Of a stretch of DNA of 64,000 nucleotides, positions 1,027 to 25,115 are shown one piece after another. Below the pieces are notes generated by a model that worked only from the letters and a program-made list of their open reading frames with translations, made no database searches and was not told the origin of the DNA. The stretch comes from Paramoeba atlantica. Lineage: Eukaryota > Protista > Discosea. Numbering within the stretch: the stretch's first letter is position 1; each line of letters begins with the position of its first letter. Location: the NCBI GenBank assembly GCA_977017575.1, contig CDRNVI010000056.1, positions 372,001 to 436,000 on the forward strand, written 5' to 3'. The position numbers and the translations under genes were made by a program.

Positions 1027-1761
1027 ATGGACTACCAGCCCTCCAAAGTGCGTCCCTCCAAAGTGCGAGGCGTAAATATGCCACAAGAAATGGACCTTGA
1101 ACGTCTAATTAGTGGTGTTTCCAAACCACACGAAAGTTGGAGTTCACGGACACCAGCATGTCAGTGGATAGGCATAGAATGCAATCTCGACGAACAAGTC
1201 ACGAAAATATTTTGGGCTCGTCGATCACTCCGTGGGCACTTGAATTTTTCGCACATCCCAATCTCAGTAGTGCGTTTCGATGTTGAAGAAAACATGTTAA
1301 CTGGTGGAATATTTTTGAGTGGCTTGTCTCCGTTAGTGAATCTTAAAGATTCCATTATTGGTAGGAATGAGTTTACTGGAAATCCGGACCTTACAGTTTT
1401 ACCACAAAATTTGTCGTCGACATGGATGGAGCAGAACAAACTTTCGGGTGAAGTATGTCTTACCCAACTACCTACTGAATTGAAGCATCTCGACATCAGT
1501 TGCAATGAATTAACTGGGAATATTGATCTGCGGTCTCTCCCGAGTACTCTACGTAGTTTATATATGAACCAAAATTTATTTGAAGGAATTGTGGACTTGT
1601 CACATCTTCCACAAAAGCTTGATGACTTCTTTATTGATGACAATGAACTGTTGGAAGGTACCATAATGTTAAGCAGCCTCCCTGCTAATTTAAAAGGTGA
1701 GGTTTTACGGATGACGAGAAATACTAAGCTTATTGTTGCTTCGGAATCACTCTTGGGGTAA
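1027..1761 (+). CDS. Leucine-rich repeat protein (LRRNT-capped family), 244 aa
   Basis: SKVRG..PQEMDL.R motif, PHxSW..AC.W.G..C cap, then LP..L..L.L..N.LTG.IDL repeats. Confidence 0.88.
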   Translation: MDYQPSKVRPSKVRGVNMPQEMDLERLISGVSKPHESWSSRTPACQWIGIECNLDEQVTKIFWARRSLRGHLNFSHIPISVVRFDVEENMLTGGIFLSGLSPLVNLKDSIIGRNEFTGNPDLTVLPQNLSSTWMEQNKLSGEVCLTQLPTELKHLDISCNELTGNIDLRSLPSTLRSLYMNQNLFEGIVDLSHLPQKLDDFFIDDNELLEGTIMLSSLPANLKGEVLRMTRNTKLIVASESLLG

Positions 1762-1873
1762 TCTACTCTCTTGGGGCAATCTCTCTCGGGGTAGAGTGTG
1801 TTTTGTTTTCGCAAATATCTCACTTTTCTTACACCGGACTGGATTTATAAACATAAATCCAAAACGTATATAA

Positions 1874-2230
1874 TTTAGTCGCTTCGTTAAACGCGGTGGT
1901 TGTTTTCAACATAGCAGTCACTCATGCTGCGAGCTTCGCGTTGAAAACTACCTGCGGGTTCAAAATAAGCGACTAAAAAAGAAAAATTGAATAGGAAACC
2001 TAAAGATATCGGAAGGATTCGAGCCAAACATAGCAGATTTGGGGTAAAAATGGGGGCATTTTCGCATTTTTTGGTTCTCAGAGCACTAAGTCCGACATTC
2101 GCGTGTGGGCAATCGCTCGTAGACATGAATTAAAACCTGCAGAACGTAATGGGTAAAGAATGCGACTCCAACCACACCATTATTCCGACAGAAAAGTGCC
2201 CCTTTGGAACCACGGCTCCAGGGAGCGGTG
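1874..2230 (-). repeat. Hairpin-ended dispersed repeat, copy 1
   Basis: Arms 1874-1910 and 1940-1977 around a 29-nt loop; the ~300-bp body is homologous, inverted, to ~19940-20301. Confidence 0.75.
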
Positions 2231-3058
2231 TCTTAAAAAAATATTGTTCTTTTTTATCTTCTTATCTGCTCATCTGTTCTTCTTATCTGTGTATCTGTGC
2301 TTGCACTCGCCTACACTCACATTCAGTCGTGCGCACGTCAGGTTCGGTACACTTTGTGTCAACTGCTCCGTGGGTTGAAAAGGATACTTCTCTGGGAAGT
2401 ATTGCCATTTGGAATCTGAAATGGCTCTGATTGTAGTGGCTGTGGCCTGCTCTGTGTGAAATGGTGGTATTGACTCCCATCTTGTCCTACACTCTTCCGT
2501 ATCTGTGTACCATTTCCGAAATCGACAGTATGTTGGTAGACGTTTCAAGTGTGGTGCGCACTTGGTCGGTCGTGTCCCATACCCACTCTGGAACTTTGTC
2601 CTCCGGGCTTGGTAAGAGGGGTCACAAGAGTCCACATCCGACCTTCAGGATCTCTTGGGCGTGGAGACGGAGGAGGGATTGGAGTAAACGATCAAGAGTA
2701 GTTACACTGGTGGATAGATAAGAGGGTGGGTAAAGTATTGATGAAAAAGGACGAAAATTGAAAAAAGCACTGCTCCGTGCAATAATATTTTTTCGTCTAT
2801 TATCCGACAAAAATCTACCCTAAATTGACCCTATTTTTTTGAGAAACAAATGCTTTTATTTTCGTTTTTTACAATTGTTTTTCGTAATTTTGCGTACGTC
2901 TGGTACGTTCCTTTCGTATTTCCGCATTGATTTCGTCTATATGGGCTGTCTAGGGTGCGCACCATTAGCCGGAATAATATTGGTGACTTCAATTCTACTG
3001 AAAACTACTGAAAATGTTGTTCTATGGATGAAAAATCATTCTTCGGGGCGTACACTCC

Positions 3059-3444
3059 TTGTTTTCGCTGTGGAGAGCGACTTCGGAAACTTTTTTAAAA
3101 GAATTTGAGGACGCACCCAAGTGTGGTTTAGAAGTGCCAGAATTCGGTCTCTTTTTTATCACCAAAAGCCGAATCGTTGATGAAACCCGTGGCTGGCTTC
3201 TTATTGCGAGCCACAGATCGCCGTTACCGTGTATACTGGCACCGGGGGAACTCAAGGTACGTGTCCAGACGACCTTAGAGGGAACAGATGCAAGCATATT
3301 TATTTTGTTTTGATGAAGGAACTTCATGATGAAAAACATCTGGCTGTTTTGAAATCTGAATTCACTACACGGGAACTTTCGGCCAAAGTAAAGGAATATT
3401 GCATAAGTCAAGGAATATTGCATAAGTCAAGGAATATTGCATAA
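3059..3444 (+). pseudogene. Degenerate SWIM zinc-finger gene remnant
   Basis: GTCPD...RCKHIYFVL resembles the SWIM CxC..CxH core with the first Cys missing; coding-like sequence is split over frames and runs into a tandem repeat. Confidence 0.4.
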
Positions 3445-3504
3445 GTCAAGGAATATTGCATAAGTCAAGGAACATTGCGTAAGTCAGGGAATATTGCATA
3501 AGTC
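3391..3504. repeat. 19-bp tandem repeat x6 (AAGGAATATTGCATAAGTC)
   Basis: Units start at 3391, 3410, 3429, 3448, 3467 and 3486; the last two carry substitutions. Confidence 0.95.
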
Positions 3505-3599
3505 AAGAAGCACTTCTGTCCTCCCGGTGAGGCCCCGGAGTTGCAAGAGGCCTCCATACCCCACAACTACCACCTTCCCCCCATATTTAGCGGGGGTCG

Positions 3600-3786
3600 C
3601 TCGAGCGACCCTTTTGCCGAAAAAATCGCGCTTTTTCACCCAAAAAAGGAGATTGTTCACAATGTTTTGGCAATTTTTCTTTTTTAGGCTCTTCGTTAAA
3701 CGCGGAGGTAGTTTTCAACGCGAAGCGCACAGCGTGAGTGACTTCTAAGTTGAAAACAACCACCGCGTTTAACGAAGAGCCTAAAA
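3600..3786 (+). repeat. Hairpin-ended dispersed repeat, copy 2
   Basis: 38-bp arms 3682-3719 and 3749-3786 (2 mismatches) with a 29-nt loop; body homologous, inverted, to 23057-23140. Confidence 0.8.
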
Positions 3787-4256
3787 TTAATGACAGGGGG
3801 AGTAACTAATTCTGCACATAAAGAGGTTTGTCCATAAAAAAAGCGCCGCGAATTGTTTTACTCTTTTTTTGGTTTTTCCAGTATTTAGTTATTGTTCCTA
3901 GAGCCACGTATTGTGCCTAGAGCCAGTTATTGTGCAGGGGGGGGGGGGGGGCACAATAACCCGGAACACGGTTTACATGACATTTGTGAACGTTTGTAAC
4001 TGCCTATTGTTCTGGAAATGTGTTGAAATGTGTTTTAGAAGTGTTGAAGCTATAAATTTTATTCAAAAATTAATAAAAAAAGTAAGTGAAAAAAAATTAC
4101 CAGTTTTTGAACTTTAGGGTTCATTTTTTCCGGAATACTTTCCTTTTTTGTCCCTTCGTTACAAACCGTGGTTCTTTTCAACCTTCAAAAGGCACTACAT
4201 CTTACCCGCTTTTTTTCTTTTCCCTTCCTTTTCCCTCTTTCCTGTATATTCCCCCT

Positions 4257-4901
4257 ATGTCTCCCCTCTTTATCATGGCCTCGGACCCCTCCCCCCCACC
4301 GGGACATGGCTCCACACCCTCCAAGCTCGCCTCCACCACACTCCCCCCGGAGTTTCACCTCTCCCGTTTCCTCCACCCCCTCACCAACCCGCACAGCTCA
4401 TGGGAGACCTCCCACGCGGCCTGTGAATGGGAGGGGGTGAAGTGTAACGACCAGAAGCAACTCGTCGCGTTGCTCTGGCAGGGGAGGGGGTTGAAAGGGG
4501 GGGTGGCCTGGGAGCACCTGCGGGTACTCCCGGCTACCCTAGTGGAGATCCACCTCGGGGAGGGTCACTTGTTTGACCGGAATGAGCTGCACGGGACGGT
4601 GGACTGGGGCGCGCTTCCGCGGGCCCTGGAGAAGCTGTCGTTGTCGTACAACCAGTTTGAGGGGGGTGTGGTGTTTTCGGAGCTCCCGCGGACGCTGCGG
4701 GAGTTGGATGTGGAGGCGAATCGGTTTTCGGGGGAAGTGGATTTTGAGGCGATCCCGGAGGATATGTTTGCGTGTGTGTTGTCGCATAATTGGAAGCTGC
4801 GGGGGACGTTGGATTATTCGAAGTTACGAAAACGGGTTATTTTTATGGTATCGAGTACGGAGATTGAGGTAAAGGAAAGGATGATGCAGTTTAGGTTTTA
4901 A
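4257..4901 (+). CDS. Leucine-rich repeat protein, GC-rich family member
   Basis: PSKLAS..LPPEFHLSRF, PHSSW..ACEWEGVKC cap and LP..L..L.L..N.F.G repeats. First in-frame ATG is 4257 (alternative 4275); the tracked 4086 start is non-ATG. Confidence 0.85.
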   Translation: MSPLFIMASDPSPPPGHGSTPSKLASTTLPPEFHLSRFLHPLTNPHSSWETSHAACEWEGVKCNDQKQLVALLWQGRGLKGGVAWEHLRVLPATLVEIHLGEGHLFDRNELHGTVDWGALPRALEKLSLSYNQFEGGVVFSELPRTLRELDVEANRFSGEVDFEAIPEDMFACVLSHNWKLRGTLDYSKLRKRVIFMVSSTEIEVKERMMQFRF

Positions 4902-5629: not shown

Positions 5630-5833
5630 CCCTCATATTTGCTCCCTTTAGACAACTGTATATGGACGGAGTAGTTAGTATCTTTTGTGTACGTTCATTC
5701 TGGATGTGAAAATACATTGAATGTGTTTTTGAATTTTATGTCGTTGTAAAAACGGAAGTATTCTTTCAACTCTATCTAAAGCATACACACAAGTACCAGA
5801 TCTTTCTTCATACATTTATACACCCATATTTTC

Positions 5834-6445
5834 ATGAAATCAGAAAAGAAATGTTCTCCATCCAATTCTTTACCAAAAAAGCGATCCGTCTCTTTCGCTA
5901 CTACCATACCTCAGCGCAATGAGTACGTAACCCTTAACCCCTCCAACGTATTTGGCACTTCTCTGTTTGATTACAACATTGCTCGCAAGAAGGAAGAGGA
6001 CGAAATTGTGAAACGAAGAATTTTACGTGGATCCCACAGTTTTCACACATCCTTACCCCTCGAAACTCTAAAATCGGATCCAATCCAAAACGACGGGAGC
6101 AATAAAATAATAAAAAAAAGCAGCAAGCGTAAAAAGGGTGGGAATCCCTTTATCGATGTAAAAGATTCGAAGGCTACGAAAACCAATGCTAAGAGAACTA
6201 AAATCCAAGACATATCGAATTGTGAAGACAAATTGATATTCCCTGCCATGCTAGAAGAAGACTCCACTCACATTCCGATCACTTCTCAGCAAGTGTTTCA
6301 CCCTTTTCAGATTCCTACCGCTTTAGACACAAACTGGCTTACGGTTCTGGAGCTAAAGCGGGAACTCTCGACAAGAGCGCTTCCTGTTTTCGGGAACAAA
6401 GCTTCTCTAAGGAAAAGATTAGAAAAAGCACTTAAGGAGTCGTGA
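5834..6445 (+). CDS. Protein with C-terminal SAP DNA-binding domain, 203 aa
   Basis: C-terminal LTVLELKRELSTRALPVFGNKASLRKRL fits the SAP pattern; basic NLS-like stretch KKSSKRKKGG. Confidence 0.75.
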   Translation: MKSEKKCSPSNSLPKKRSVSFATTIPQRNEYVTLNPSNVFGTSLFDYNIARKKEEDEIVKRRILRGSHSFHTSLPLETLKSDPIQNDGSNKIIKKSSKRKKGGNPFIDVKDSKATKTNAKRTKIQDISNCEDKLIFPAMLEEDSTHIPITSQQVFHPFQIPTALDTNWLTVLELKRELSTRALPVFGNKASLRKRLEKALKES

Positions 6446-8754: not shown

Positions 8755-9633
8755 ATGTATGTTATTCTAAAACTATCTACGATGTTTGCACCTCAAATGC
8801 AGTTAGCAGATACGCAGCAGTCGCAGAATACACGACAGAGACATGATGGAACTTCTTTGTTGTCTGTAGCACGGGGAAACCTATCAGAAGCCACAACACC
8901 CGTTGTTTGTCTCGGTAAGGTTCGAGGATCGAGTTTACCACAGGAATATGAACTTGCACGATTGATTGCAGATGTTAGAAATTCACATTCCTCCTGGAAT
9001 GTTTCAATAGCTGCGTGCAAATGGCAAGGTGTGACGTGTGATGAAGAATTACGCGTCACACAAATTTACTGGACAAAGAGACTTTGGAATGAATATTTGA
9101 CTTACGTAGAAGTAAATTTAAAGCCTCTTGCAGGACCCCTTCACTGGCATTATTTGCCCCGTACACTGCTTCGTTTTTCTGTTGCGTCTAATAAGCTCAT
9201 AGGAACAGTTCCGCTTGATTCGTTGCCTCCGGACCTTTTGTTCTTTTACGCATCCGACAATACGTTTACTGGTGAATTAAACTTGACAAGCTTGCCGTTA
9301 ACGTTGAAGGGACTGAGTCTTAAAGCTAACATGTTTGAAGGATGTGTGGACTTTACTCAGCTACCACCGAATCTAACATTCTTGACCGTTTCTGGCAACG
9401 AACTTTCCGGAATCGTTGACTTATCTTCTTTGCCGGACACGATGTTCGAACTTGATTTGTCCAACAATCAATTCGAGGGTCCAATAGTATTAGGAGAAAT
9501 CCCTTCAAGATTAGAGATGCTAAAACTTGAGAATAATGCAAAACTTTGCGGTGAGATTGATGTGGGCTCTTTTGATGAGAAAGACATAGTCATAGAATAC
9601 AGCCAGACCAATATCAGATCTAAAATGATTTGA
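8755..9633 (+). CDS. Leucine-rich repeat protein, 292 aa
   Basis: GKVRGSSLPQEYELARL, SHSSW..ACKWQGVTC cap and about 6 LRRs; exact start codon uncertain. Confidence 0.88.
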   Translation: MYVILKLSTMFAPQMQLADTQQSQNTRQRHDGTSLLSVARGNLSEATTPVVCLGKVRGSSLPQEYELARLIADVRNSHSSWNVSIAACKWQGVTCDEELRVTQIYWTKRLWNEYLTYVEVNLKPLAGPLHWHYLPRTLLRFSVASNKLIGTVPLDSLPPDLLFFYASDNTFTGELNLTSLPLTLKGLSLKANMFEGCVDFTQLPPNLTFLTVSGNELSGIVDLSSLPDTMFELDLSNNQFEGPIVLGEIPSRLEMLKLENNAKLCGEIDVGSFDEKDIVIEYSQTNIRSKMI

Positions 9634-10535: not shown

Positions 10536-12125
10536 ATGATTCTACAATCTACATCCTGTGCTGACACGTCTGCCTCACGACGTGGTAAAATAGCAAACGT
10601 TGCATTCCCCCCTGAGCTGCAAGTACTGCGGTTCCTCTCAGGTGTGACCAATCCACACAGTTCTTGGGTCCCGTCTGTCCCCCTCGAACTGTGGGGGGGC
10701 GTTGTGGTTGACGGCGACAGAAAACTTTACAGACTCGAATTTATAGACTCGCTCGACCTAGAAGGCACATTGAATTGGCAACATTTTCCAGACATGGTTG
10801 AAAGTTGTAACTACTCGCTTACCATGTAAGCGAGTCCCCCCATACAGCTCTCTCTCTCATTTCGACCTACCTGGCATGCGACGCCCTCCAACGTGGCTAG
10901 CCGACAATGACGGTATGCTACGTCCGGACGGGTGGGTAAAGCTAAGGGACGGGAAAGAGTTCATTATTGAATTAACTTGCCCATGGGAGGAGAATATGCA
11001 GGTCGCGCACGAACGGAAAATGCTGAAATACCACCACCTGTGGCATACGCGAAAAGAAAATCATCCCGAAACATACCTATTCGCCCTAGAGATTGGGGCT
11101 CGCGGAAGTCTCCAAGACTCGGCGAGTAAATTAGACATGCTCTTCTGCGAGGAAATAAAGCTTGCGAAGGAGTGTCGCCAACATTTGGTGACGAGAGCAT
11201 TTAGGGGGAGTTTCACTATATACCAAAATCGGGACCGCGCAAACTGGAACCCCATGGATGTTTGTATTTCGGATGAGTAAACGGGAATAGCCAAACACGT
11301 CGTATGCGTGTACGGGATCATATATTGTGCGATCCCAGGCTATTTGACTTAATCTCTACAGTATAACTGTATGAATCCTTCTTCTTTCCACACAAGTCTG
11401 ACTGGTGCCGTGCAGTGGGGTTCTCTCCCTTCCTGCTTAGTCACACTTGAATTAGCAAACAACAACTTTTCTGGGCCTCTGCCTTCGGGGTCTAATCCCC
11501 TTCCAGAGCGTTTGCATACCTTTGATCTTTATTCAAATCGCTTTTCAGGTCCAGTTGATCTGGAAGCTCTGCCGCAAGAGATCAAGTTATTCTCTTTTTC
11601 CATGAATCGTATAACTGGGGAGCTTGACTTGACCCGACTGCCTCCTGTTCTTGAAACTCTTTATGCTTACGAAAACAATTTGGAAGGTGTCGCCGATCTT
11701 ACATATCTTCCGAAAACAATCGAGGGTTTAGTTTTACGCGGCAATTCTTTTTCTGGAACCATCGATTTAACATGCTTGCCGGCAGGTATGTAAGAATTAG
11801 ATCGCTCTCCGGGGAAGTTTCATAATTTTTCAGCACCGCGAGAACAAACAGTGGATGGAGGTTAGTTCTGGGGAGTGAGTCGCTGACTGTCAGGTGATTT
11901 CAACGCGTTTTGTGCGCGTAATAAGGAACTCCCATATTCACCGTCTAATCTCTGTAGAATATTTTCTACATGATAACGTATATATTCAGCCATAATGAAT
12001 TTTCCGGCGTTGTTCGCTGGGCAGACCTTCCCCCCGCTCTTTACTATATTTATTTAGATGGAAACAAGATTACTGCTGCCGATCCTAACCCTCGTCCAGA
12101 TGCCATAAGAATTTCTCTATGGTAG
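10536..12125 (+). pseudogene. Disrupted LRR-family gene
   Basis: N-terminal cap at 10536-10805 (GKIAN..FPPE, PHSSW), retroelement insert, LRRs at 11353-11793 ending at a premature TAA, then a frameshifted tail (FSHNEFSGVVRWADLPPALYYIYLDGNK) ending at 12125. Confidence 0.8.
10806..11352 (+). mobile_element. 3' fragment of a non-LTR retrotransposon with restriction-like endonuclease (RLE) domain
   Basis: LRPD...IIELTCPWEEN..A.ERK..KY..L...ALEIGARG is the PD-(D/E)xK RLE signature of R2/R4/NeSL/HERO-type elements. Stop at 11280, short 3' UTR; junctions approximate. Confidence 0.8.
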
Positions 12126-12354: not shown

Positions 12355-14739
12355 ATGTCATATACGAATTGGCAGCGCTCCCTGCGCGAACCTATCTTCC
12401 TCCAAAACACAACAAAGAAAAACGTTTACCCCTCCAGCGACACGACGCTTCCCCCCATCGCACCCTATCCTCTATCCTTCAAAAACAAAAGTCGTGCTCC
12501 CTCTTCCTCAAAACAAAATCTTTGTCTACATGTCACAACCCGTGACATTCCTTCACACGCTACGAATCGCTCATCCGTTTCTTCCTCTCCTTCCCCACGG
12601 TCGTGTGTAAAACGTAAATCGTTCTCTCCACAACACAACCCCTCTCGAAATCGAAATTTTAGAAAGTTCGAGAGCATTCAAAAGTTGGCATCCCCCGAGA
12701 CGTGCGACCATGAGATCTTGGCCCCTTCTTCTTCTTCTTCCTCCTCTTCTTTTCGGTCGAATACAAAGTTAAATGTGCGAACCTCTAAAGTCTCTTTAAA
12801 GACTTTAGAGACTTCACTTTCTTTTGTCTCTTTTTTACGTTATGGTCTAAAAGAGTATTCAAAAGGGCTGAAAATGGGAAAAACGTTTTTGAGGAATAAA
12901 GAGACGTCTGGAGTGCACGCTTCTTGGAGCGGTTCCCATTCTTCGCAGCCTTCTTCTTCTTCTTCTTCTTGTGAAAGGGGAAAAGGGATTTCAATGCATG
13001 AAAAGGATCATGTTTTGGTTTTTTCCTATCAAGAGGTCCAAGAGGATTGTAGGATTAATAACCCTAAGGGGAGTGAAACAATTTCGTATACTCAAGAAGG
13101 GGAGAGCAAGAAGGAAAAGAGGGATTTTCAAGAATGGAAGAGCAAGAATGAAAGTGTGGATTTTCTAGAACGCAAGTTCGAAAATGAAAATAGACATTTT
13201 CAAGAAAAAGAACATTTTAACATTCAAAACGCGGAATCTCATGCTGCAGACAATAACCCTCTACCCCCAAAGCTCTCCAAAACCATCGCTTTATGTTCTC
13301 CACAATCCCACAACGCTACGGTTGTAAAAGACGAGGCTAATAGGCCAATTACCTGCTCTCCCTGCACGCCTTTTCATTCTGTAAAGAAGGCATCGAATGT
13401 CGTAAAAAATTCAAAACACAACTCTTCTCTCCTTTCCTTCACCTCTCACGCCCCTGATCTTTTTCAAAAAATCCATCGCCTTTTTGGTTGGGACTTGGAG
13501 GAAATTTGCACTCAACTTTTTCACCCGATTTGGGAAAACACAAAAACACCGGGAAAATCAAAAGCTCGGATTTATTACGCTGGGGCGCACTGGGTAGTAA
13601 AAACGGTGACTGAAAACGAGCAGAGCTTTCTGTGTCGCTTGTTACCACATTATGTACGTTATGTCGAGGCTCATCCGAATACAAGGCTTCCGATATTCGT
13701 TGGGCATTTTTCGGTGAGTTATGATGCAAGTCTTACGAAACATGAAAACGCAAAGTCATTTTTTGGAAGCTTATTCGATAAGAAACTGTGTTGTAATTCA
13801 TCTTGTAGAACAACACGAACCGCGCATGTTGTGGTCATGCGAACGGTTTTTGAATCCAGTCTTCCGCTCTCCTGTGTGTATGATTTAAAAGGAAGTACAA
13901 CCGGTCGAAGCTATGGGGTACGGAAAGACAAAGATGTGGGGATAAAAAAAGAGAGCCACAAAAACTCTCTTTTTGTAACGGAGAATACGAGAATCGGATT
14001 ATCTCCGTCTCATGCCTCTCTTTCTCTTTCTTCCGCTACAGATCTGAACGAAAAAGAATTTTTTCGTAAACCTCGAGATGCATCAACTCTTGCAGCCCTT
14101 CCTTCTTTTTCTGCGCAATCTTTTAAAAAACCTTTCTTTCTAGACGCCCAACTTGCTTCTTCTTCTTTGCCCTCTCCTCCCATGTTTTACGATTCCGATC
14201 TTCTACCCACCATGAAAGTTCATTTAGCTCTCGAAGACAGTGAGCTTGTGATCTCGCAAATCCAAAAGGACTGCAATTTTCTGCAATCGTTTTCGGTCAT
14301 GGATTACAGTCTTCTGTTGGGCGTCAGTCGAATTTTCGATACTCATTCACATTCTTCTTCACAGAAAACAGAGACTGGACCTAAAGAGTTATCGAAAGGA
14401 GAAAATTCTGTTTTGGATAGCACAAAGCGCAGGGCTTCAACCTCCTTTCGAAATTTACGCAATGGCATGAGGGAAAGCGATGTGAATTCTGCTTTGTCTC
14501 ATGCCATGATCAATGGAATTTGCTCCCCTCCACTTCGCTCCAGTGAGGGACATCTCTATTATGAGATCTACTTTTTTCGAATGATTGATGTTTTACAACA
14601 ATATACCCTTCGAAAAAAGTTGGAGCATTTCTTTAGAGGAATGTGCTATGGGTTTCATTCCATCAGTGCAGTTCCGCCGGCCGCGTACGCGAAACGTTTT
14701 CAGAAATTAATGAAGCGTACTTTTGCGTGCCAAACGTGA
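12355..14739 (+). CDS. Phosphatidylinositol phosphate kinase (PIP5K family), 794 aa
   Basis: GKS, VVKT, YDLKGS, D..FL....VMDYSLLLGV, IDVLQQY..RKKLEH and SAVPP..YA.RF motifs; long low-complexity N-terminus. Confidence 0.92.
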   Translation: MSYTNWQRSLREPIFLQNTTKKNVYPSSDTTLPPIAPYPLSFKNKSRAPSSSKQNLCLHVTTRDIPSHATNRSSVSSSPSPRSCVKRKSFSPQHNPSRNRNFRKFESIQKLASPETCDHEILAPSSSSSSSSFRSNTKLNVRTSKVSLKTLETSLSFVSFLRYGLKEYSKGLKMGKTFLRNKETSGVHASWSGSHSSQPSSSSSSCERGKGISMHEKDHVLVFSYQEVQEDCRINNPKGSETISYTQEGESKKEKRDFQEWKSKNESVDFLERKFENENRHFQEKEHFNIQNAESHAADNNPLPPKLSKTIALCSPQSHNATVVKDEANRPITCSPCTPFHSVKKASNVVKNSKHNSSLLSFTSHAPDLFQKIHRLFGWDLEEICTQLFHPIWENTKTPGKSKARIYYAGAHWVVKTVTENEQSFLCRLLPHYVRYVEAHPNTRLPIFVGHFSVSYDASLTKHENAKSFFGSLFDKKLCCNSSCRTTRTAHVVVMRTVFESSLPLSCVYDLKGSTTGRSYGVRKDKDVGIKKESHKNSLFVTENTRIGLSPSHASLSLSSATDLNEKEFFRKPRDASTLAALPSFSAQSFKKPFFLDAQLASSSLPSPPMFYDSDLLPTMKVHLALEDSELVISQIQKDCNFLQSFSVMDYSLLLGVSRIFDTHSHSSSQKTETGPKELSKGENSVLDSTKRRASTSFRNLRNGMRESDVNSALSHAMINGICSPPLRSSEGHLYYEIYFFRMIDVLQQYTLRKKLEHFFRGMCYGFHSISAVPPAAYAKRFQKLMKRTFACQT

Positions 14740-14948
14740 ATTTCACAGATAAACTGTTTATCTAATCTAGATGTATGTTCTCCAGACTGGAAAATACATG
14801 TACAACGCCGACTCTTTTTACATTTCGTATCCGCTTCTTTTCTCTTTCACTTTTGAAAACAAAATACATAACCCTTGTGGTATTTCTGGCCTATTTCAAT
14901 CTTTGTCAAACAGAATTTCGTTTTCTTATTTCTCCATTCGATAGTTAC

Positions 14949-15689
14949 ATGATGGGTTTGGCGTTTCGTTCTTTCTGTGAAGCATTGGATGACTTAAAGC
15001 CCAATAGACTCGAAAGCCGACTAGGTAAGGTGCGAGGCCATTTACCACAAGAATACGAACTCGCACGATTTGTTGAAAATGTTGCAAACCCTAAACCTTC
15101 ATGGCATTCGGCTACCCCTGCGTGTGATTGGGAAGGTGTGTACTGTGATTCGAATTTACAAGTAATGGATATTCGTTGGAGTTATAAAAAAATTGCAGGA
15201 CCATTTCAATGGGACTATCTGTGCCGCACGGTTCTTACCTTTATCTCGCGTGAAAACGATCTTTCAGGGGCTTTGGATTTCTCTAATTTGCCCTTTACAA
15301 TGACGAGACTTCAATTGACAGACAACAACTTTGAGGGATGTGTGGATCTAACTCATTTGCCTTCAACTTTGACACTTTTGTTTTTGAGTCACAATCTTTT
15401 TTCTGGGGAGATTGACCTCACACGTTTACCCTCCACCATGGAACATTTGAGTGTCTCGAACAATCGTTTTACGGGCCCTCTTGACTTACAACATTTGCCT
15501 CCATCTCTCAAGTCTCTCCAGTGTGATTTTAATGATTTCAGCGGCCGAGTAATGTTTGATTCTCTTCCTGTAGGCTTGCACCATCTGACTTTGGGACATA
15601 ATTCTAATCTTCGTGGTGATGGTTCAAAGATCCCGGTCCTCCCTATGGGTGTGGATGTGTCCAGTACAAAGATATCCATGAAACATTAA
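14949..15689 (+). CDS. Leucine-rich repeat protein
   Basis: GKVRGHLPQEYELARF, PKPSW..ACDWEGVYC cap and LRRs. The tracked ORF opens at 14775 (ATG); 14949 is preferred as it matches family N-terminal length. Confidence 0.88.
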   Translation: MMGLAFRSFCEALDDLKPNRLESRLGKVRGHLPQEYELARFVENVANPKPSWHSATPACDWEGVYCDSNLQVMDIRWSYKKIAGPFQWDYLCRTVLTFISRENDLSGALDFSNLPFTMTRLQLTDNNFEGCVDLTHLPSTLTLLFLSHNLFSGEIDLTRLPSTMEHLSVSNNRFTGPLDLQHLPPSLKSLQCDFNDFSGRVMFDSLPVGLHHLTLGHNSNLRGDGSKIPVLPMGVDVSSTKISMKH

Positions 15690-15910: not shown

Positions 15911-16771
15911 ATGATCTTTCCATCATGCCGGCGTTATGATGCTGTCGAGGATTCACATCCTCCTAGGCAACACAATCACATCGGTAAGATACGGGGCTCC
16001 ACCTTACCACAGGAATATGACCTCTCCCGTCTACTCCAAAATTTTGAAATTCTCCATCCCTCATGGAATACGCGAACACCTGCCTGTGAGTGGCAAGGCA
16101 TCACTTGTGGAAGTGACTTTCCACACTTGTGTGTAAGTAACTCACAAGTAGCACAGATTTATTGGAATGAGATGAGTCTTCGAGGGTCTCTTCAATGGGA
16201 TTATCTTCCCCTCTCTGTGCATTCTTTTCACATTGGAAATAACTGGATAACCGGTTCGGTCCCTTTTCACACGCTGCCTTCTCATTTTACCTGTCTTCAG
16301 CTTTTAAACAATCAATTTACGGGTCCTGTCGACTTTGTCCGTCTTCCACAATCGCTACGAAATCTTTGTTTAAATTCTAATTTGTTTTACGGCGAAGCGG
16401 ATTTGACACACTTGCCACCCGGTTTGGTCTCTCTGCAGTTCTCTTCGAATAAATTTTCTGGTACTCTTGATCTTTGCAGTTTGCCACATGGTCTCGCTCT
16501 TCTTGAGCTACGCGACAATGCGCTTTCCGGTCCTCTTGACCTTAGACAGTTGCCCTCCTCTCTTGAAACGTTGAATTGTGAGGCCAATCGTTTCTGTGGT
16601 TTGGTGCAGTTTGATAAACTGCCTAAACAATTGCTCTCCGTATATCTCAGTGAAAACACTGAACTTTGTGGTAAAGTGGACACTTATCCAAGTTCTGGTT
16701 TCCCGTTCGTGTCCGTCAAAAACACAAACATACGCGAGACATTCAGAAACGCGACTTTTGAATTTTTCTGA
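15911..16771 (+). CDS. Leucine-rich repeat protein, 286 aa
   Basis: GKIRGSTLPQEYDLSRL, HPSW..ACEWQGITC cap and about 7 LRRs. Confidence 0.9.
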   Translation: MIFPSCRRYDAVEDSHPPRQHNHIGKIRGSTLPQEYDLSRLLQNFEILHPSWNTRTPACEWQGITCGSDFPHLCVSNSQVAQIYWNEMSLRGSLQWDYLPLSVHSFHIGNNWITGSVPFHTLPSHFTCLQLLNNQFTGPVDFVRLPQSLRNLCLNSNLFYGEADLTHLPPGLVSLQFSSNKFSGTLDLCSLPHGLALLELRDNALSGPLDLRQLPSSLETLNCEANRFCGLVQFDKLPKQLLSVYLSENTELCGKVDTYPSSGFPFVSVKNTNIRETFRNATFEFF

Positions 16772-17205: not shown

Positions 17206-17973
17206 ATGGACAATACATCGCACAGTCGCCCCAGTAAAGTACGAGGAGCTCTTTTACCCTCTGAATACGAACTTACACGCTTTGTATCAAAGATAGAAAA
17301 TCCGCATATTTCTTGGAGCGCATCGACTCCTGCATGCGAGTGGAAAGGAGTCACCTGTGTTGACTCTCGTATTCAAATAGTGGATTGGGGACGTAGCGGT
17401 CTTAAGGGGTCTCTTCTCTTCGAGTGGATGCCCCGTGCATCCCGTTTCTTTTATTTATTTAACAATCAGGTTGGAGATTTTGTTAAACTTGACTCTTTAC
17501 CACCTCAACTGACGTGTCTGGATCTTGATATCAATACATTCAGTGGTTCGATCGATCTGATTCACTTACCCTCCACCTTTCGTACTCTTTCATTGCGTAA
17601 TAATGCATTTGCAGGATCTGTTGATCTTAGTCACTTGCCACCGAATCTGGAGGAATTATATCTTAGCAACAACAATTTAAGTGGTAGAGTCGATCTCGAT
17701 CGTTTGCCTCTGTGCATGATCTCTCTAGATTTGTCCCATAATCGATTCACCGGTTTCCTCTCGCTGGAAAAGCTTCCTCCTTTGCTTGAGTATGCCTTCT
17801 TTGATTGCAATTGTTTTTACGGTCTTGTTCAATTTGAAACCCTTCCTGTGACTTTAGAATCTTTGAGCATCAAAAGTAACTTGGAACTTGTTGGCGAAAT
17901 CAAGAGGCACTCACTTCCCGACAAATTGACAAGTATTGACATCGAAGATACCCAAATAAGTTTAATTCCCTGA
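17206..17973 (+). CDS. Leucine-rich repeat protein, 255 aa
   Basis: SKVRGALLPSEYELTRF, PHISW..ACEWKGVTC cap and LRRs; preceded by TCTCTTGCAG. Confidence 0.9.
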   Translation: MDNTSHSRPSKVRGALLPSEYELTRFVSKIENPHISWSASTPACEWKGVTCVDSRIQIVDWGRSGLKGSLLFEWMPRASRFFYLFNNQVGDFVKLDSLPPQLTCLDLDINTFSGSIDLIHLPSTFRTLSLRNNAFAGSVDLSHLPPNLEELYLSNNNLSGRVDLDRLPLCMISLDLSHNRFTGFLSLEKLPPLLEYAFFDCNCFYGLVQFETLPVTLESLSIKSNLELVGEIKRHSLPDKLTSIDIEDTQISLIP

Positions 17974-20301: not shown

Positions 20302-20340
20302 TTAATTTTTATAAATGGGTCATTTAGGGGCATTTATAAA

Positions 20341-20547: not shown

Positions 20548-20589
20548 TCTACAAGCTGGTCGCCCTTCCACAACATGGCCAGCTGGCTT

Positions 20590-21365
20590 GTGTGCAGATG
20601 GCCACTGCAGCTACATTGCATTACTGCAGTCACTTCCTCACGTGGCAGTGCACTTACTCTCGCACGTGCCACTGCAGCTACACTACAGTCACTGACTCTC
20701 TCGCGCGCCACTGCATCTACACTGTGTTCACTGTCTCACGTGGAAGTAGGCTTACTCGCGCACGTGCCACTGCATCTACACTGCGTTCACTGCCTCACGT
20801 GGCAGTACTCTGTCACTTACCACTGTACTTACAGTGGTAGTGCACGTACTCTTGCACGTGCCACTGCAGCTGCAATGCATCACTGCAGTCACTTCACGCG
20901 GCAGTGCAGCTGCATTGCATCAATACAGTCACTGCCTCACGTCGCAGTACACTTACTCTCTCACGTGCCACTGAAGCTACACTGCAGTCACTGACTCTCG
21001 CACGTGCCACTGCATCTACACTGCGTTCGCTTCCTCACGTGGCAGTAGACGTACTCGCGCACGTGCCACTGCAGCTACACTGCGTTCTCTGCCTTACGTG
21101 GCAGTACACTTACTCTCTCACGCGCCACTGCAGATCCACTGCATCAATACAGTCACTGCCTCACGTGGCAGTACACTTACTCTCTCAAGTGCCACTGCAG
21201 CTACACTGCATTACTGCAGGCACTTCCTCACGTGGCAGTGCACTTACTCTCGCACGTGCCACTGCAGCTACACTGCAGTCACTGCCTCTCTCACGCGCCA
21301 CTGCGTCTACACTGTGTTCACTGCCTCACGTGGCAGTACACTTACTCTCTCAAGGGCACTGTATC
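20590..21365. repeat. Complex minisatellite built from CACGTG/CTGCAG-containing modules
   Basis: Alternating modules such as CACTGCCTCACGTGGCAGTACACTTACTCTC and GTGCCACTGCAGCTACACTGCAGTCACTG. Confidence 0.85.
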
Positions 21366-21885: not shown

Positions 21886-21954
21886 TACTGTGCCCCCCCC
21901 ACTTATAGTGCCGCGGTTTTCGACCAAACGGCACTATAAGTGGGGGGGCTAGTA
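21886..21954. mobile_element. 69-bp hairpin micro-MITE
   Basis: TA-CTGTG-C8-ACTTATAGTGCCG-(15 nt)-CGGCACTATAAGT-G7-CTAG-TA; the end resembles the MITE at 26495. Confidence 0.6.
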
Positions 21955-22955
21955 TGTTTCAGGTCGAGGGTGAAAATTTTCCTCCCCCCAAAAAAAAGCG
22001 CAGCGCTTCGCGGCGCAATTCTTTCTATCATGTGGTTTTGAGTGCCTAAGCGCTGTAAATGTTTGTGAAATATTAATTCGTGAACAAATTTCGAAATGGC
22101 GAGCTGTATTCCGCATGTTTCCATAACGAAAAAGATGTTTTCACCTTTTTTGCATTAACACGACTTTTGTTGACACAACTTTTGTTGCCTCGACTTTTGT
22201 TGCGAAAACTTTTTTCCCCCCAGTAGGGGAGAAGAAAGATCAACGCACTCATGAGCCAAAAAAGGTCTTTGCCCACCAAAAAAGCGTACCCCAGTAACAA
22301 GGATTCTAGTAGTCCATCCTAGTAGTCCAACAAGGATTCTAGAGTCCAAAATGAGGGAGTTGCTATGCTCTGTCCATGGTATCATGTTCAGGGGAACAGC
22401 AACTCCCCATTATCCCGGCGTAGTAACCACGCCTTGGCTTGCCTGGCACTACGATTGCCGAAAAAAAAAATCGGTTCATTTCGCAGCCCAGTCGCTTCCC
22501 ACTTAAGGGGCCCGTTCCCACAACCGAGTGATCTCCCCGGCAGCACGGTTTTACCCATGCGTTGAGAAGGCTGGGGTGTGAGACCAGGGTGCATTAGTAG
22601 AAAATTTTCGGAGGAAGAAATACGAAGGAGATTTTACTGTATAAGGGAGTTTGAGTGCAATAGGAAAAAAAGGGGGTTGGCTTAAATGTTTTGGTATCGA
22701 CTCATACCAATTACTCTAAATTCGTTCATGATAAGATTTAAACCAGGTGACGGTTAAGTGTTTATTAGGAACCATAAGTCTGGACATTTGGAACAGGGCC
22801 CGCGGTCGGAGTTTGGCTACTCCCCATTCCTGCTCAAGGGGTAGGAACAGGTTTCCTCGACAACACGTCGCCGTCCGGAGTCTTTCCGTCTGGAGACGCG
22901 TTGTTAAGTCCAAACCTTGTTGACGCAACCAGTGTGTATAAAACTGTTCTGTATA

Positions 22956-23140
22956 TTATGCTCTTCGTTAAACTCGGTGGTTGTCTTCAACTTAAAAGTC
23001 ACTCATGCTGCGCGCTTCGCGTTGAAAACTACCACCGCGTTTAACGAAGACCCTAAAAAAGAAAAATCTCCAAAAGATCATGAATAATCTACTTTTTTTG
23101 GGGGAAAAAGCTTGACTTTTCGGCAAAAATTGCGAAATTT
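22956..23140 (-). repeat. Hairpin-ended dispersed repeat, copy 4
   Basis: Arms 22956-22991 and 23021-23056 with a 29-nt loop; body is the inverted homolog of 3600-3681. Confidence 0.75.
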
Positions 23141-23566
23141 TACACCAAATTTGGTCCGTTTTGGATGCCTTACCAGTAGGGGCAGGAGGCAAATCTGACG
23201 AAAAAAACGTCGTAGAATAGTAGGTGAGGTCCTAAACTCTCCAAATACGGTTTAGAAGTCGATTTCGGAAAAATAAATATTTACTTTTTTCCGGGTCAAA
23301 AGAAATTTGTTTTGGTCATCCCAAAAATTTCAGAATTTTTGACCTTTTCGGACCCCTCCAGCGCGTACCAGGGTACCCTCAGGTGGGGGGAATCGTTTTT
23401 TTAATTTATTACATTTTTACCAGCGAAGACATGAAAATAGAGGAGCCCCGGCGCCGCGAAGCGGCGCCAATTTTTTTTTGCACTATTTTCGTTGTTTTTC
23501 GGAATTTTTATTGTACCTGTAGCTACGTATTGTACCTGTAGCTAGTTATTGTACCGGTGGGGTACA

Positions 23567-24112
23567 TTAACCCGGACGGGGGTTTAGTTGGCCTCTTCGG
23601 GCTTCACAGATTCGACAAAGATTTTTGAGATGACCGGAGATTGTACCAATTAACCCTTGTAAAGGGCTTAAATTCTCCTTTTCTGCCTCACATCCTTTGC
23701 TCACCGTGGGAATTTCTTTTTCAGCCTCCATCTTGTCAAGAGTGTGCTTCCGTTGTTTCAAGATGGAGGCTGTTCGCAGTAAAATGTTTCCTGTGATTTG
23801 GTCATGATCATAATTTCCTTTCTCTATGAGTTCGACAACTTTTAATTTTGGTAACTCAGCCACCGTTTCTCCAATATCTTTCAACACAGCTGAAGGATAG
23901 TCTAGATCTTGAGGCCATTTCTCTTGCATTGCAGTGAAAAAGGGAATCCTAACCTTTTTGTCTTTAATCTTCAATGTAGTGTACTTCATAATGAGTCCCA
24001 ATTCATCTTTCAAAGCCTTGGATAGCACGACATTAACTGTAGCTTCTGTGGAGGCCATGAGCAAAATAAAGGACACAGTAAGAAAGGTGTCGGTAAGCTC
24101 CATGCATATCAA
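23567..24112 (-). CDS. Hypothetical protein, possibly truncated or mobile-element derived
   Basis: 181-codon ORF with protein-like composition; the only sizeable non-transposase minus-strand ORF not overlapping another gene; its stop lies inside a dispersed repeat. Confidence 0.35.
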   Translation of the reverse strand: MICMELTDTFLTVSFILLMASTEATVNVVLSKALKDELGLIMKYTTLKIKDKKVRIPFFTAMQEKWPQDLDYPSAVLKDIGETVAELPKLKVVELIEKGNYDHDQITGNILLRTASILKQRKHTLDKMEAEKEIPTVSKGCEAEKENLSPLQGLIGTISGHLKNLCRICEARRGQLNPRPG

Positions 24113-24209
24113 TCAAAACTCATTTTTTTCCCCTTGAACGCTAACAGCTCAATGAAAATTACAATTGAAAAACTTATATTTGCCTATCTAATCTTTGCCT
24201 TCAAGTTTC

Positions 24210-25115
24210 ATGTCCCCAAGACTTCTTTCTGGGGTTGTGAAATCGAGTGACACTCAACCCCCTATAAGTTCATCTCGACGTGGCAAAGTTCGTGGCGCTA
24301 TTCTCCCACAACACGTGATGATGCGTCGATTTGTTTCTGAAATGGAAATTCCGCAATTTGCTGAGCGCGACGATGTCTGCACTTGGGAAGGTGTTACTTG
24401 TAACGACCATGGTGAGGTTAAGGGGATTGATTGGTCGTATAAAATTATGTTTGGAAACCTTAAGATTATGGTAGGAAATCTTACCTGGGAGTGTTTACCC
24501 TCGACCGTTTCAAGACTTAATTTATCGAGCAACCGTCTCTCTGGAGAGCTCCCCACACGAGTGTTACCTTCAGTCTTGGAATATTTGAATATACAAGAGA
24601 ATGGATTCCTTGGACCTTTTGACGCAACGGAACTTCCAAACAAACTAAGAAAATTTTTCTCTGCAGACACAAACTTTTCAGGGATTCTAGACTTATCATC
24701 ACTGCCTCCTGTTATAAATGCGTTTTCCGTTGTGAACAATATGTTTGCAGGACATATCGATCTCACGTGCCTTCCGTCATCTTTGCGAAGTTTGTACCTG
24801 CAAGAAAACTCTTTTAGTGGTCCCATTGATTTGACGAAGCTTCCACACAGAATGGACATCTTGTCGCTTCACCAAAACAATCTTATAGGCAATCTTGATC
24901 TGCGATGCCTTCCGACAACACTGAGGAGACTTGATCTCAATTCAAACTGCTTTTCTGGTGAGCTTTACGTGAACACACTACCCGATTCGGTGACTGAAGT
25001 AAATATTCGTGAAAATAATGGCAACCTGTTGTTACCTTCACCATTGCCGAGCAATATTAAAATGGGGGTCATTTCGAATAAAATAGTTTGCAATCCAGAA
25101 TGGAGCTCTAATTAG
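24210..25115 (+). CDS. Leucine-rich repeat protein
   Basis: RRGKVRGAILPQ, VCTWEGVTC cap and about 8 LRRs; first ATG at 24210 within the ORF tracked from 24195. Confidence 0.88.
   Translation: MSPRLLSGVVKSSDTQPPISSSRRGKVRGAILPQHVMMRRFVSEMEIPQFAERDDVCTWEGVTCNDHGEVKGIDWSYKIMFGNLKIMVGNLTWECLPSTVSRLNLSSNRLSGELPTRVLPSVLEYLNIQENGFLGPFDATELPNKLRKFFSADTNFSGILDLSSLPPVINAFSVVNNMFAGHIDLTCLPSSLRSLYLQENSFSGPIDLTKLPHRMDILSLHQNNLIGNLDLRCLPTTLRRLDLNSNCFSGELYVNTLPDSVTEVNIRENNGNLLLPSPLPSNIKMGVISNKIVCNPEWSSN

What the first reader, a model, noticed from the sequence alone, without database searches (positions are those of the whole stretch)
1027..25115. Eight-member LRR family sharing a conserved pre-cap motif [GS]K[VIL][RA]x..LP[QPS]E(Y)EL.R
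Seen: each paralog has a variable 5-55 aa leader, then SKVRG..PQEMDLER (1027), SKLAS..PPEFHLSR (4257), GKVRG..PQEYELAR (8755, 14949), GKIAN..PPELQVLR (10536), GKIRG..PQEYDLSR (15911), SKVRG..PSEYELTR (17206) or GKVRG..PQHVMMRR (24210). A W..AC.W.GV.C cap and a few LRRs follow, with no obvious signal peptide, TM segment or kinase domain. Known: the Cys cap resembles LRRNT caps of plant extracellular LRR proteins, which are normally secreted. Inference: the basic motif may be a non-classical export or cleavage signal, analogous to RxLR/PEXEL, marking an expanded effector or recognition family; this would fit an endosymbiont or parasite.
Basis: partly seen in the sequence, partly recalled or inferred. 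Interest (0 to 1): 0.7.

Follow-up and report, generated by a model that had tools for sequence, protein, structure and literature searches.

The report
Conserved N-terminal cap of LRR family
The shared motif is real, but most of it is the first helix of the leucine-rich-repeat cap in a family of about a thousand small, signal-peptide-less proteins of a kinetoplastid protist; only a short basic tail in front of that helix (R-x-G-K-V-R-G) remains unexplained, and nothing marks it as an export signal.

Summary
All eight ORFs carry the motif at the stated places. The family is far larger than eight: about 1,100 C-x-W-x-G-V-x-C caps in the 45.7-Mb assembly, haplotigs included.

The motif has two parts.
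- L-P-Q-E-Y-E-L-x-R-F/L-I/V is the alpha-helix of a plant-type LRRNT cap. AlphaFold2 gives pLDDT 97. Structural alignments to plant LRR ectodomains (Z about 22) begin exactly there.
- R-x-G-K-V/I-R-G is equally conserved but predicted flexible (pLDDT about 60).

In every copy I inspected the motif sat on an LRR gene.

Two family members match MMETSP transcripts. Both have in-frame stops just upstream of the Met, so these proteins have no signal peptide. The organism uses a kinetoplastid spliced leader and is probably a free-living bodonid, not a parasite.

The RxLR/PEXEL-like export reading is not supported. The "expanded recognition family" part is plausible, because the concave-face positions are the most variable.

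My best reading is an N-terminal capping module plus a constant basic tail whose role (docking or processing) is unknown. The scan noted this family before on other DNA of the same genome (s1-392906).

The parts
1027..1761 (+). LRR family gene (244 aa). Leader is 8 aa (M-D-Y-Q...), pre-cap motif at 1051-1110, cap ends at 1182.
   Evidence: A close paralog in the same genome (P0072, at G000:C21 ~713.4 kb) is 99% identical to the product of an MMETSP transcript (P0163).
4257..4901 (+). Short LRR family gene (214 aa). Divergent motif S-K-L-A-S..L-P-P-E-F-H-L-S-R at 4314-4373, cap ends at 4445.
8755..9633 (+). LRR family gene (292 aa). Leader is 51 aa and holds L-A-D-T-Q; motif at 8908-8967, cap ends at 9039. 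This is the protein folded in model 1.
10536..11793 (+). Broken family copy. N-part at 10536-10829 (motif 10578-10637; cap cysteines replaced). A ~0.58-kb insert carries a fragment of an R2-type endonuclease ORF (10798-11280). The LRR remainder lies in another frame at 11371-11793.
14949..15689 (+). LRR family gene (246 aa). Motif at 15018-15074, cap ends at 15146. The stretch 14799-15414 is absent from part of the contigs of other runs of the same organism.
15911..16771 (+). LRR family gene (286 aa). Motif at 15977-16036, cap ends at 16108.
17206..17973 (+). LRR family gene (255 aa). Leader is 7 aa (M-D-N-T...), motif at 17227-17286, cap ends at 17358. This is the protein folded from the motif onward in model 2. 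Its 3' part is covered by contigs of a probable RNA run.
24210..25115 (+). LRR family gene of the sister subfamily (301 aa). Motif R-R-G-K-V-R-G-A-I-L-P-Q-H-V-M-M-R-R at 24276-24335, cap ends at 24401.

Best explanation
The motif is the N-terminal capping module of a lineage-specific, massively expanded family of small (about 200-350 aa) LRR proteins without signal peptides, in a kinetoplastid protist.

Shown:
- L-P-Q-E-Y-E-L-x-R-F/L-I/V, running on to N-P-H-x-S-W, is the amphipathic alpha-helix of a plant-type LRRNT cap. It packs on the first repeat and leads into the C-x6-C hairpin.
- About eight 23-residue repeats of the form L-P-x-x-L-x-x-L-x-L-x-x-N-x-F-x-G-x-V-D-L follow.
- The preceding R-x-G-K-V/I-R-G is as conserved as the core but lies outside the fold, as a flexible basic tail. 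It sits about where signal peptidase creates the mature N-terminus of plant LRR ectodomains.
- The motif is tied to LRR genes. In the two multi-module relatives seen, only the first, N-terminal cap has the basic piece.

Inferred:
- The proteins stay inside the cell, or leave it by no classical route.
- The variable concave LRR face gives each paralog its own specificity.
- The invariant tail is a constant handle shared by all paralogs: a docking site for one common partner, or a processing site. It is not a cargo-independent export signal.
For: Family size and linkage of the motif to LRR genes.

Conservation starts abruptly at R-x-G-K-V-R-G, at 3.1-3.6 bits per column against 3.9-4.2 for P-Q-E-Y. 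All four Val codons and all six Arg codons occur there, so selection acts on the protein.

Structure:
- Model 1 has residues 1-60 at pLDDT 45-63, then 97 from L61, with a helix at 63-70.
- Model 2, started at the motif, has its first ten residues at mean pLDDT 60 and everything after at 96 or more, with a helix at 12-19.
- VIA-align gives plant LRR ectodomains at Z 19-23 and rmsd 2.0-2.5 over about 215 residues. The alignments start at model residue 60-62. PGIP residue 4 aligns with model residue 60. Foldseek agrees.

No signal peptide:
- P0174 (MMETSP, typed 'complete') is 100% identical to G000:C69:306978-307586, and P0163 is 99% identical to P0072.
- In-frame stops lie 6 codons and 1 codon upstream of their Met codons.
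- Only 24 of 145 database proteins of the family have an SP-like hydrophobic window.

Internal caps of P0016 and P0021 keep the helix but not the basic piece.

The beta-strand positions 6, 7, 9, 11, 12 and 14 of the repeat are the most variable, at 3.0-3.3 bits of entropy.
Against: - AlphaFold's low confidence does not prove disorder. The tail could order against the LRR, a partner or a second copy.
- The 'constant handle' role is inference only. No partner or protease was identified.
- The N-termini of most paralogs rest on ORF logic, not on RNA. Some have hydrophobic N-terminal stretches ending in A|D that resemble short signal peptides. One metagenomic relative (P0021) has a convincing SP-like h-region before S-L-A-D, so a secreted ancestry, or secretion of some members, is possible.
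- The conserved C-x6-C pair is typical of extracellular caps.
- The N-terminal specificity of the basic piece rests on two proteins with four internal caps.
Confidence: 0.7

Rival explanations
1. R-x-G-K-V-R-G is a proteolytic maturation site. The variable leader is a propeptide removed after the basic residue, which exposes the cap helix as the mature N-terminus, as in plant LRR ectodomains.
For: - The site maps within about three residues of the mature N-terminus of PGIP and plant receptor ectodomains in structural alignments.
- The leader upstream is variable in length (3-132 aa, median 32) and in sequence.
- The piece is flexible and accessible.
- It occurs only at the protein's N-terminal cap in multi-module relatives.
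Against: - No protease, cleaved form or peptide evidence was found.
- The site has Lys at P3 and Arg at P1 and is not dibasic, so by my recollection of those consensus sites it fits neither a kexin- nor a furin-type site.
- Leaders as short as 7-9 residues would make a propeptide pointless.
- There is no signal peptide that would bring the protein to secretory-pathway convertases.
Confidence: 0.13
2. One reading: a non-classical export or host-targeting signal analogous to RxLR/PEXEL, marking an effector family of a parasite or endosymbiont.
For: - A conserved basic motif lies 10-50 residues from the N-terminus of a very large, fast-diverging family.
- The proteins lack a classical signal peptide yet have an extracellular-type Cys cap.
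Against: - The motif was never seen on non-LRR proteins, and it sits at a fixed distance from the cap helix, which is part of it.
- It has no RxLR or RxLxE consensus.
- RxLR and PEXEL act downstream of a signal peptide or hydrophobic stretch (my knowledge). That feature is absent in the transcript-backed members.
- The organism has a kinetoplastid SL RNA and matches MMETSP transcripts from a cultured protist, so it is probably a free-living bacterivore.
Confidence: 0.05
3. The tail is purely structural. In the real protein, or in an oligomer, it orders as an extra strand or strap on the first repeat, and it is conserved only for folding.
For: - It is conserved as strongly as core residues and at a fixed distance from the helix.
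- AlphaFold often gives low confidence to terminal straps.
Against: - Two models (five predictions each) leave it unstructured at pLDDT about 60.
- Plant caps fold without any equivalent.
- Internal caps of P0016 and P0021 lack it.
Confidence: 0.1
4. The conservation is at the nucleic-acid level. The codons AAG GTA CGA GGA GC mimic the spliced-leader 5' splice site (GTATGAGAAGC) and act in RNA processing.
For: - 9 of 11 bases match the SL RNA intron start.
- GTA and CGA are over-used in the motif, at 55-59% against 24% elsewhere in the family.
Against: - All synonymous Val, Arg, Gly and Lys codons occur.
- The third-position majority (48-63%) is no higher than in the neighbouring P-Q-E-Y-E-L codons (50-83%), as expected from shared ancestry.
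- Conservative replacements (K/R, V/I) point to the protein.
- The reading frame runs on into the helix.
Confidence: 0.02

Closest known systems
Plant extracellular LRR proteins with an LRRNT_2 cap (PGIP, and the SERK, ERL, HAESA and FLS2 ectodomains)
   Same: - The same cap architecture: an N-terminal helix, then W...C-x-W-x-G-V-x-C, then a right-handed LRR solenoid.
- These are the best structural matches (Z 19-23, rmsd about 2.2 over about 215 residues).
- Pfam LRRNT_2 hits lie near its cut-off.
- Profile hits to PEPR1, FLS2 and BRI1.
   Different: - No signal peptide, TM segment or kinase.
- 23-residue repeats with an L-P-x-x-L signature instead of the 24-residue plant-specific repeat.
- No C-terminal Cys cap.
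- An extra conserved basic tail R-x-G-K-V-R-G where plants have the signal-peptide cleavage site.
Leishmania promastigote surface antigen PSA/GP46 and the related bodonin ectodomains of Bodo saltans
   Same: - A kinetoplastid multigene LRR family with an N-terminal C-x6-C domain before the repeats (PMC2584048).
- PSA-like ectodomains already exist in a free-living bodonid (PMC4728078).
   Different: - PSA has a signal peptide, 24-25-residue repeats, a Cys-rich C-terminal domain and usually a GPI anchor (PMC2584048). None of these is present here.
- I did not test sequence homology to PSA directly.
RxLR (oomycete) and PEXEL (Plasmodium) host-targeting motifs
   Same: A short conserved basic motif a few tens of residues from the N-terminus of large, fast-evolving families.
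   Different: - From established knowledge, those motifs follow a signal peptide or hydrophobic stretch and precede unrelated cargo domains, and PEXEL is cleaved in the ER.
- Here there is no signal peptide and no matching consensus.
- The motif is fused to a single kind of domain, and half of it is that domain's first helix.
Bacterial YopM/IpaH/SspH-type LRRs and FNIP repeats
   Same: - The L-P-x-x-L-x-x-L...N repeat signature.
- YopM is the top sequence hit among solved structures (2.1e-57).
- FNIP (PF05725) scores up to 31.8 bits, above its cut-off of 21.
   Different: - Those repeats are 20-22 residues long and lack the G-x-V-D-L half.
- They have a different helical N-cap and no C-x6-C cap.
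- No effector domain is attached here.
Small plant-like LRR genes reported in Bodo saltans BAC clones
   Same: A 948-bp and a 483-bp LRR gene, neither with a signal peptide marked in the table, and with best BLAST hits to plant receptor kinases (Table 2 of PMC2621209). These look like the same kind of gene.
   Different: They were only listed in a table. No motif, family size or structure was described, and I could not fetch their sequences to test.

Membership tests
Leucine-rich repeat superfamily | Tandem L-x-x-L-x-L-x-x-N units forming a curved solenoid | tested here: met
   Pfam LRR_1, LRR_4, LRR_8 and FNIP hits. AlphaFold2 solenoid with pLDDT 96-99. Z about 22 to solved LRR domains.
LRRNT_2 (PF08263) plant-type N-terminal cap | An N-terminal helix followed by W...C-x-W-x-G-V-x-C, scoring above the Pfam gathering cut-off (20.7 bits) | tested here: inconclusive
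   Four of eight window proteins reach the cut-off (21.0-24.1 bits). Three fall just below (16.3-20.6), and the truncated 10536 copy has no hit. The match covers only profile positions 16-41. Structurally the helix and hairpin superpose on plant caps from the first residue of the helix.
Plant secreted LRR proteins / receptor ectodomains | A cleavable N-terminal signal peptide | tested here: not met
   Two members identical or 99% identical to MMETSP transcript ORFs start M-L-S-L-H-T-A-D and M-D-Y-Q, with in-frame stops 6 codons and 1 codon upstream. Only 24 of 145 family proteins have an SP-like hydrophobic window. SignalP was not available.
Plant secreted LRR proteins / receptor ectodomains | A C-terminal Cys-pair cap, TM helix and/or kinase domain | tested here: not met
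   No Pfam domain beyond LRRs. The C-termini are short and polar.
Leishmania PSA/GP46 | A signal peptide, a C-x6-C domain, 24-25-residue LRRs, a Cys-rich C-terminal domain and a GPI anchor (PMC2584048) | tested here: not met
   Only the C-x6-C element is shared. The repeats are 23 residues, and there is no signal peptide and no Cys-rich or hydrophobic C-terminus. Direct sequence comparison was not done.
RxLR / PEXEL-type host-targeting signals | The motif lies downstream of a signal peptide or hydrophobic stretch | tested here: not met
RxLR / PEXEL-type host-targeting signals | The motif is independent of the cargo and occurs on unrelated effector domains | tested here: not met
   R.GKVRG codon pattern: 149 hits (13 in the control). 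88 of them are followed by P-x-E. 20 of 20 of the rest that I fetched are LRR genes of a sister subfamily. 18 of 18 real caps outside the strict pattern carry a degenerate motif. This is sampling, not an exhaustive profile scan.
RxLR / PEXEL-type host-targeting signals | Consensus R-x-L-R or R-x-L-x-E/Q/D | tested here: not met
   The family consensus is R-x-G-K-V-R-G-A-x-L-P-Q-E-Y-E-L.
Peroxisomal/glycosomal PTS2 | [RK]-[LVI]-x5-[HQ]-[LA] near the N-terminus | tested here: not met
   K-V-R-G-A-N-L-P-Q is out of register by one residue, with Pro where H/Q is required. I read this off the consensus by eye.

The most novel reading that the evidence does not exclude
R-x-G-K-V-R-G is a previously unknown signal specific to the protein's N-terminus. 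It would be shared by about a thousand signal-peptide-less LRR proteins of a free-living kinetoplastid. It could be a sorting or processing tag that delivers a diversified set of recognition modules to one place (for example an unconventional secretion route, the feeding apparatus or the flagellar pocket) or couples them to one common effector.
Probability: 0.12. Interest if true: 0.75.

Novelty: new variant of a known kind. Interest (0 to 1): 0.42.

Why it matters
This may be one of the largest gene families in this genome: roughly 1,100 caps, on the order of 2% of the assembly. I found no description of it in the papers I could search. It pairs an extracellular-type, plant-like LRR cap with proteins that have no signal peptide, in a free-living relative of trypanosomes. 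A constant N-terminal tail next to a variable binding face is the layout expected of a diversified recognition system with one shared output. If that holds, it would bear on how kinetoplastid LRR surface families such as PSA arose, and on self/non-self or prey recognition in heterotrophic flagellates. As it stands, the finding mainly removes an attractive but unsupported 'export signal' reading and narrows the open question to seven residues.

Tried and rejected
1. A splice acceptor at the [AS]-D element. Many copies show a pyrimidine tract plus AG just before the conserved Asp, always in the same phase. That suggested a cis- or trans-splice site with a missing first exon.
   - Rejected because the Ala codon uses all four synonymous forms.
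   - An MMETSP 'complete' ORF starts upstream of such a tract (M-L-S-L-H-T-A-D), with a stop 6 codons further up.
2. A spliced leader that donates the start codon. I located the SL RNA gene (L081). Its exon has no ATG.
3. A classical signal peptide. Hydrophobic N-terminal stretches exist in some ORF models, but they are short, are encoded by T-rich DNA, and are absent from the transcript-backed and many other members.
4. PTS2 and a mitochondrial presequence. Neither fits the consensus, and the leaders carry acidic residues.
5. A nucleotide-level (5' splice-site-like) constraint. It is not needed to explain the codon pattern.
6. RNA evidence for 5' ends. The only candidate RNA run is stored as contigs and covers just two 3' parts of the stretch I laid. 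The MMETSP transcript DNA could not be fetched.
7. The longer 577-579-aa members carry only extra LRRs, with no added domain.
8. I did not run complex prediction, because no partner is claimed.

Full report
**Observation.** The eight ORFs are at the stated coordinates on the + strand and carry the quoted strings. Each continues into W..(A)C.W.GV.C and then 23-residue repeats with an L-P-x-x-L...N-x-F-x-G signature. Pfam reports only LRR_1/4/8, FNIP and LRRNT_2, the last near its cut-off. They lie in one transcription direction with a PIP5K gene (12355-14739) and a SAP-domain gene (5834-6445). Gene 10536 is a broken copy.

**What organism.** The assembly is 45.7 Mb in 248 contigs, and many loci are present twice at 99-100% identity, which suggests haplotigs. 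It has a kinetoplastid-type SL RNA gene next to 5S rRNA. The exon ends ...CAGTTTCTGTACCTTGTTG, followed by GTATGAGAAGC. Two family proteins are identical or 99% identical to ORFs of MMETSP transcripts, and one of them is also in EukProt. A preprint states that EukProt holds Neobodo designis contigs (10.1101/2025.10.03.680260). So a cultured free-living bodonid is likely, and the species name is my guess. The ESM Atlas places the nearest cluster (433 members) in Euglenozoa.

**Family size and spread.**
- A tblastn-type search with the 17206 protein returned 164 matches at 34-100% identity. The first look gave 2,328 candidates, of which only 149 were scored, so 164 is a lower bound.
- The codon pattern for C-x-W-x-G-[VIM]-x-C occurs 1,118 times against 14 in the reversed control.
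- Exact P-Q-E-Y-E-L occurs 226 times against 0, and 197 of those are followed by W...C-x-W at the right distance.
- K-[VIM]-[R/S]-G followed by the cap occurs 340 times against 1.
- Of 20 caps taken from the cap list outside that strict pattern, 2 were chance hits. The other 18 all carry a degenerate version, such as R-L-G-R-V-R-S..L-P-Q-E-Y or R-P-A-K-V-H-G..L-P-Q-E-Y.
- A profile of motif plus cap found 352 cluster representatives at E <= 1e-10 among 1.84 billion. Most of the best 150 are 100-370 aa and match from profile position 1-3.

**Is the motif ever off an LRR gene?** The pattern R-x-G-K-V-R-G has 149 hits against 13 in the control, and 88 are followed by P-x-E. I fetched 20 of the remainder. 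All 20 are LRR genes of a sister subfamily, R-[LR]-G-K-V-R-G-A-I-L-S-Q-D-M-Q-M-A-Q-F. The window's gene 24210 also belongs to this subfamily. What is left is mostly of the size of the control. This is sampling, not an exhaustive profile scan.

**Anatomy of the motif.**
- Column information rises abruptly at R-x-G-K-V-R-G: K 3.6, V 3.4, R 3.3 and G 3.1 bits. It stays high through L-P-Q-E-Y-E-L-x-R-F (P 4.2, Q 3.9, E 3.9, Y 3.9) into the cap.
- All synonymous codons are used at K, V, R and G. GTA and CGA are over-used, but the third-position majority is no higher than in the neighbouring codons, so selection is on the protein.
- AlphaFold2 on the 8755 protein, with 53 paralogs as the alignment, gives pLDDT 45-63 for residues 1-60 and 97 from L61. 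Helix 63-70 is Q-E-Y-E-L-A-R-L.
- A second model begun at R-P-S-K-V-R-G gives mean pLDDT 60 for the first ten residues and 96 or more for all later blocks. Its helix is at 12-19.
- Foldseek and VIA-align put plant LRR ectodomains first (Z 19-23, rmsd 2.0-2.5, about 215 residues). The alignments begin at model residue 60-62, and PGIP residue 4 aligns with model residue 60.
- So the second part of the motif is the cap helix. The first part lies about where plant proteins have just lost their signal peptide.
- By sequence, the repeats also resemble YopM-type L-P-x-x-L repeats.

**The leader and the signal-peptide question.**
- The 'variable leader' usually contains Met, a short and often hydrophobic stretch, and then [AS]-D-[TDV]. 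In about one in six members a P-P-x-K-R-R-K cluster that looks like a nuclear localisation signal follows.
- Many members start directly with M-D or M-S-D.
- I considered that the pyrimidine-rich stretch plus AG before the Asp is a splice acceptor hiding a first exon. The Ala codon varies synonymously, the SL exon has no ATG, and the MMETSP ORF P0174 (typed 'complete') starts upstream of such a tract. That ORF is 100% identical to G000:C69:306978-307586, where a stop lies 6 codons above the Met.
- P0072, which is 99% identical to P0163 and related to the window's gene 1027, has a stop directly before M-D-Y-Q.
- These two expressed members therefore have 9- and 14-residue N-terminal tails before R-x-[GS]-K and no signal peptide.
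- Among 145 family proteins in the database, the median leader before L-P-Q-E is 32 aa. Only 24 have a 10-residue window with Kyte-Doolittle mean >= 2.0, and the gene-caller starts in those are untested.
- A probable RNA run covers the 3' ends of genes 14949 and 17206, but it is stored as contigs and shows no 5' ends.

**Is the basic piece needed for the cap?** Two multi-module relatives from ENA metagenome assemblies have four caps (P0016) and two caps (P0021). In both, only the first, N-terminal cap is preceded by a basic G-R-V-R or R-V-R-K-G...L-P-D-E element. The four internal caps keep a helix but not that element. P0021 also has a convincing hydrophobic h-region ending in S-L-A before Asp. 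Related proteins with true signal peptides exist too (P0173, P0175), and there the helix follows the signal peptide directly, as in plants. This suggests a secreted ancestry for the fold. The basic piece then looks like an addition specific to the N-terminus, not a structural part of the cap. The sample is small.

**Variation.** Within the 23-residue unit, the positions flanking the conserved Leu and Asn of the beta-strand (6, 7, 9, 11, 12, 14) have the highest entropy, 3.0-3.3 bits. The other variable positions have 1.9-2.8 bits. This fits diversified binding surfaces, but it is not a test of positive selection.

**Interpretation.** There is no RxLR or PEXEL consensus, no upstream signal peptide in the verified members, and no sign of a parasitic lifestyle. 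I therefore read the motif as the capping module of a very large, lineage-specific family of LRR proteins without signal peptides. The seven-residue basic tail would be a constant handle, for docking or for processing. That role for the tail is inference. A maturation site is the main rival, and a new sorting signal cannot be excluded.

**Comparison with what is known.**
- The fold is that of plant extracellular LRR proteins, but the defining signal peptide, 24-residue repeat, C-terminal cap, TM segment and kinase are absent.
- Leishmania PSA shares the C-x6-C element but has a signal peptide, 24-25-residue repeats, a Cys-rich C-terminus and a GPI anchor (PMC2584048).
- The Bodo saltans survey listed small LRR genes, with no signal peptide marked in its table and with plant-like best hits, but did not describe them (PMC2621209).
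- The B. saltans genome paper describes bodonin and PSA-like ectodomains, which are different proteins (PMC4728078).
- Searches for Neobodo plus leucine-rich repeat found nothing else.
Several earlier reports describe R2-like retroelements landing in these LRR genes, and the insert in gene 10536 agrees with them.

**Verdict.** The export-signal interpretation is not supported. What remains open is the function of R-x-G-K-V-R-G.

Noticed in passing
window 10798-11385: Gene 10536 is interrupted by a ~0.58-kb insert. Its ORF (10798-11280) has the PD...E...K-x-x-K-Y signature of an R2-type restriction-like endonuclease, so it is a 5'-truncated R2-like retroelement inside an LRR gene. The LRR coding sequence resumes in another frame at 11371.
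   Followed up: partly
window 14799-15414, and 15061/15071 to 16075: Contigs of three other runs of the same organism skip 616 bp: the leader, motif, cap and first repeats of gene 14949. They do so at roughly half the local depth, which suggests an indel between haplotypes. Other contigs join gene 14949's motif region to gene 15911's cap region. That could be unequal recombination or paralog mixing in assembly.
   Followed up: no
G000:C11:600-7000 (L081) and genome-wide: An SL RNA gene array is interleaved with 5S rRNA. The 11-mer that spans the SL exon-intron junction (CCTTGTTGGTA) occurs 230 times, dispersed over many contigs, against 22 in the control. That is far more than the arrays explain, so these may be dispersed SL RNA gene copies or SL-RNA-derived elements that include the intron start.
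   Followed up: no
motif codons, e.g. window 17236-17250: The consensus codons of K-V-R-G-A (AAG GTA CGA GGA GC) match the SL RNA 5' splice-site region (GTATGAGAAGC) at 9 of 11 bases. GTA and CGA are over-used there. This is probably shared ancestry and chance.
   Followed up: partly
leaders of about one in six family members, e.g. L045, L029, L055; window 8755 has the related L-A-D-T-Q-Q: A subset carries L-[AS]-D-T-Q-x-P-P-x-K-R-R-K between the N-terminus and the motif. This looks like a classical monopartite nuclear localisation signal and would argue for nuclear, not secreted, members.
   Followed up: partly
window 29817-31996; 20630-21349; 3386-3507: An 18-bp minisatellite of about 123 copies, a degenerate 98-bp repeat array that creates long spurious ORFs, and a 19-bp repeat of 6 copies.
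   Followed up: no
window 27279-28487 (-): An ORF with a DDE_1 transposase domain and a PHD-like zinc finger, so a pogo/Tigger-type DNA transposon remnant.
   Followed up: no
P0170, P0177 (ENA contigs of about 1 Mb, other organisms): Distant relatives keep the whole N-terminal layout in degenerate form (hydrophobic stretch, A-A-D, L-G-R-x-D-x-R-x-L..Q..M-E-L-L). The leader plus tail plus helix arrangement is therefore older than this species.
   Followed up: no
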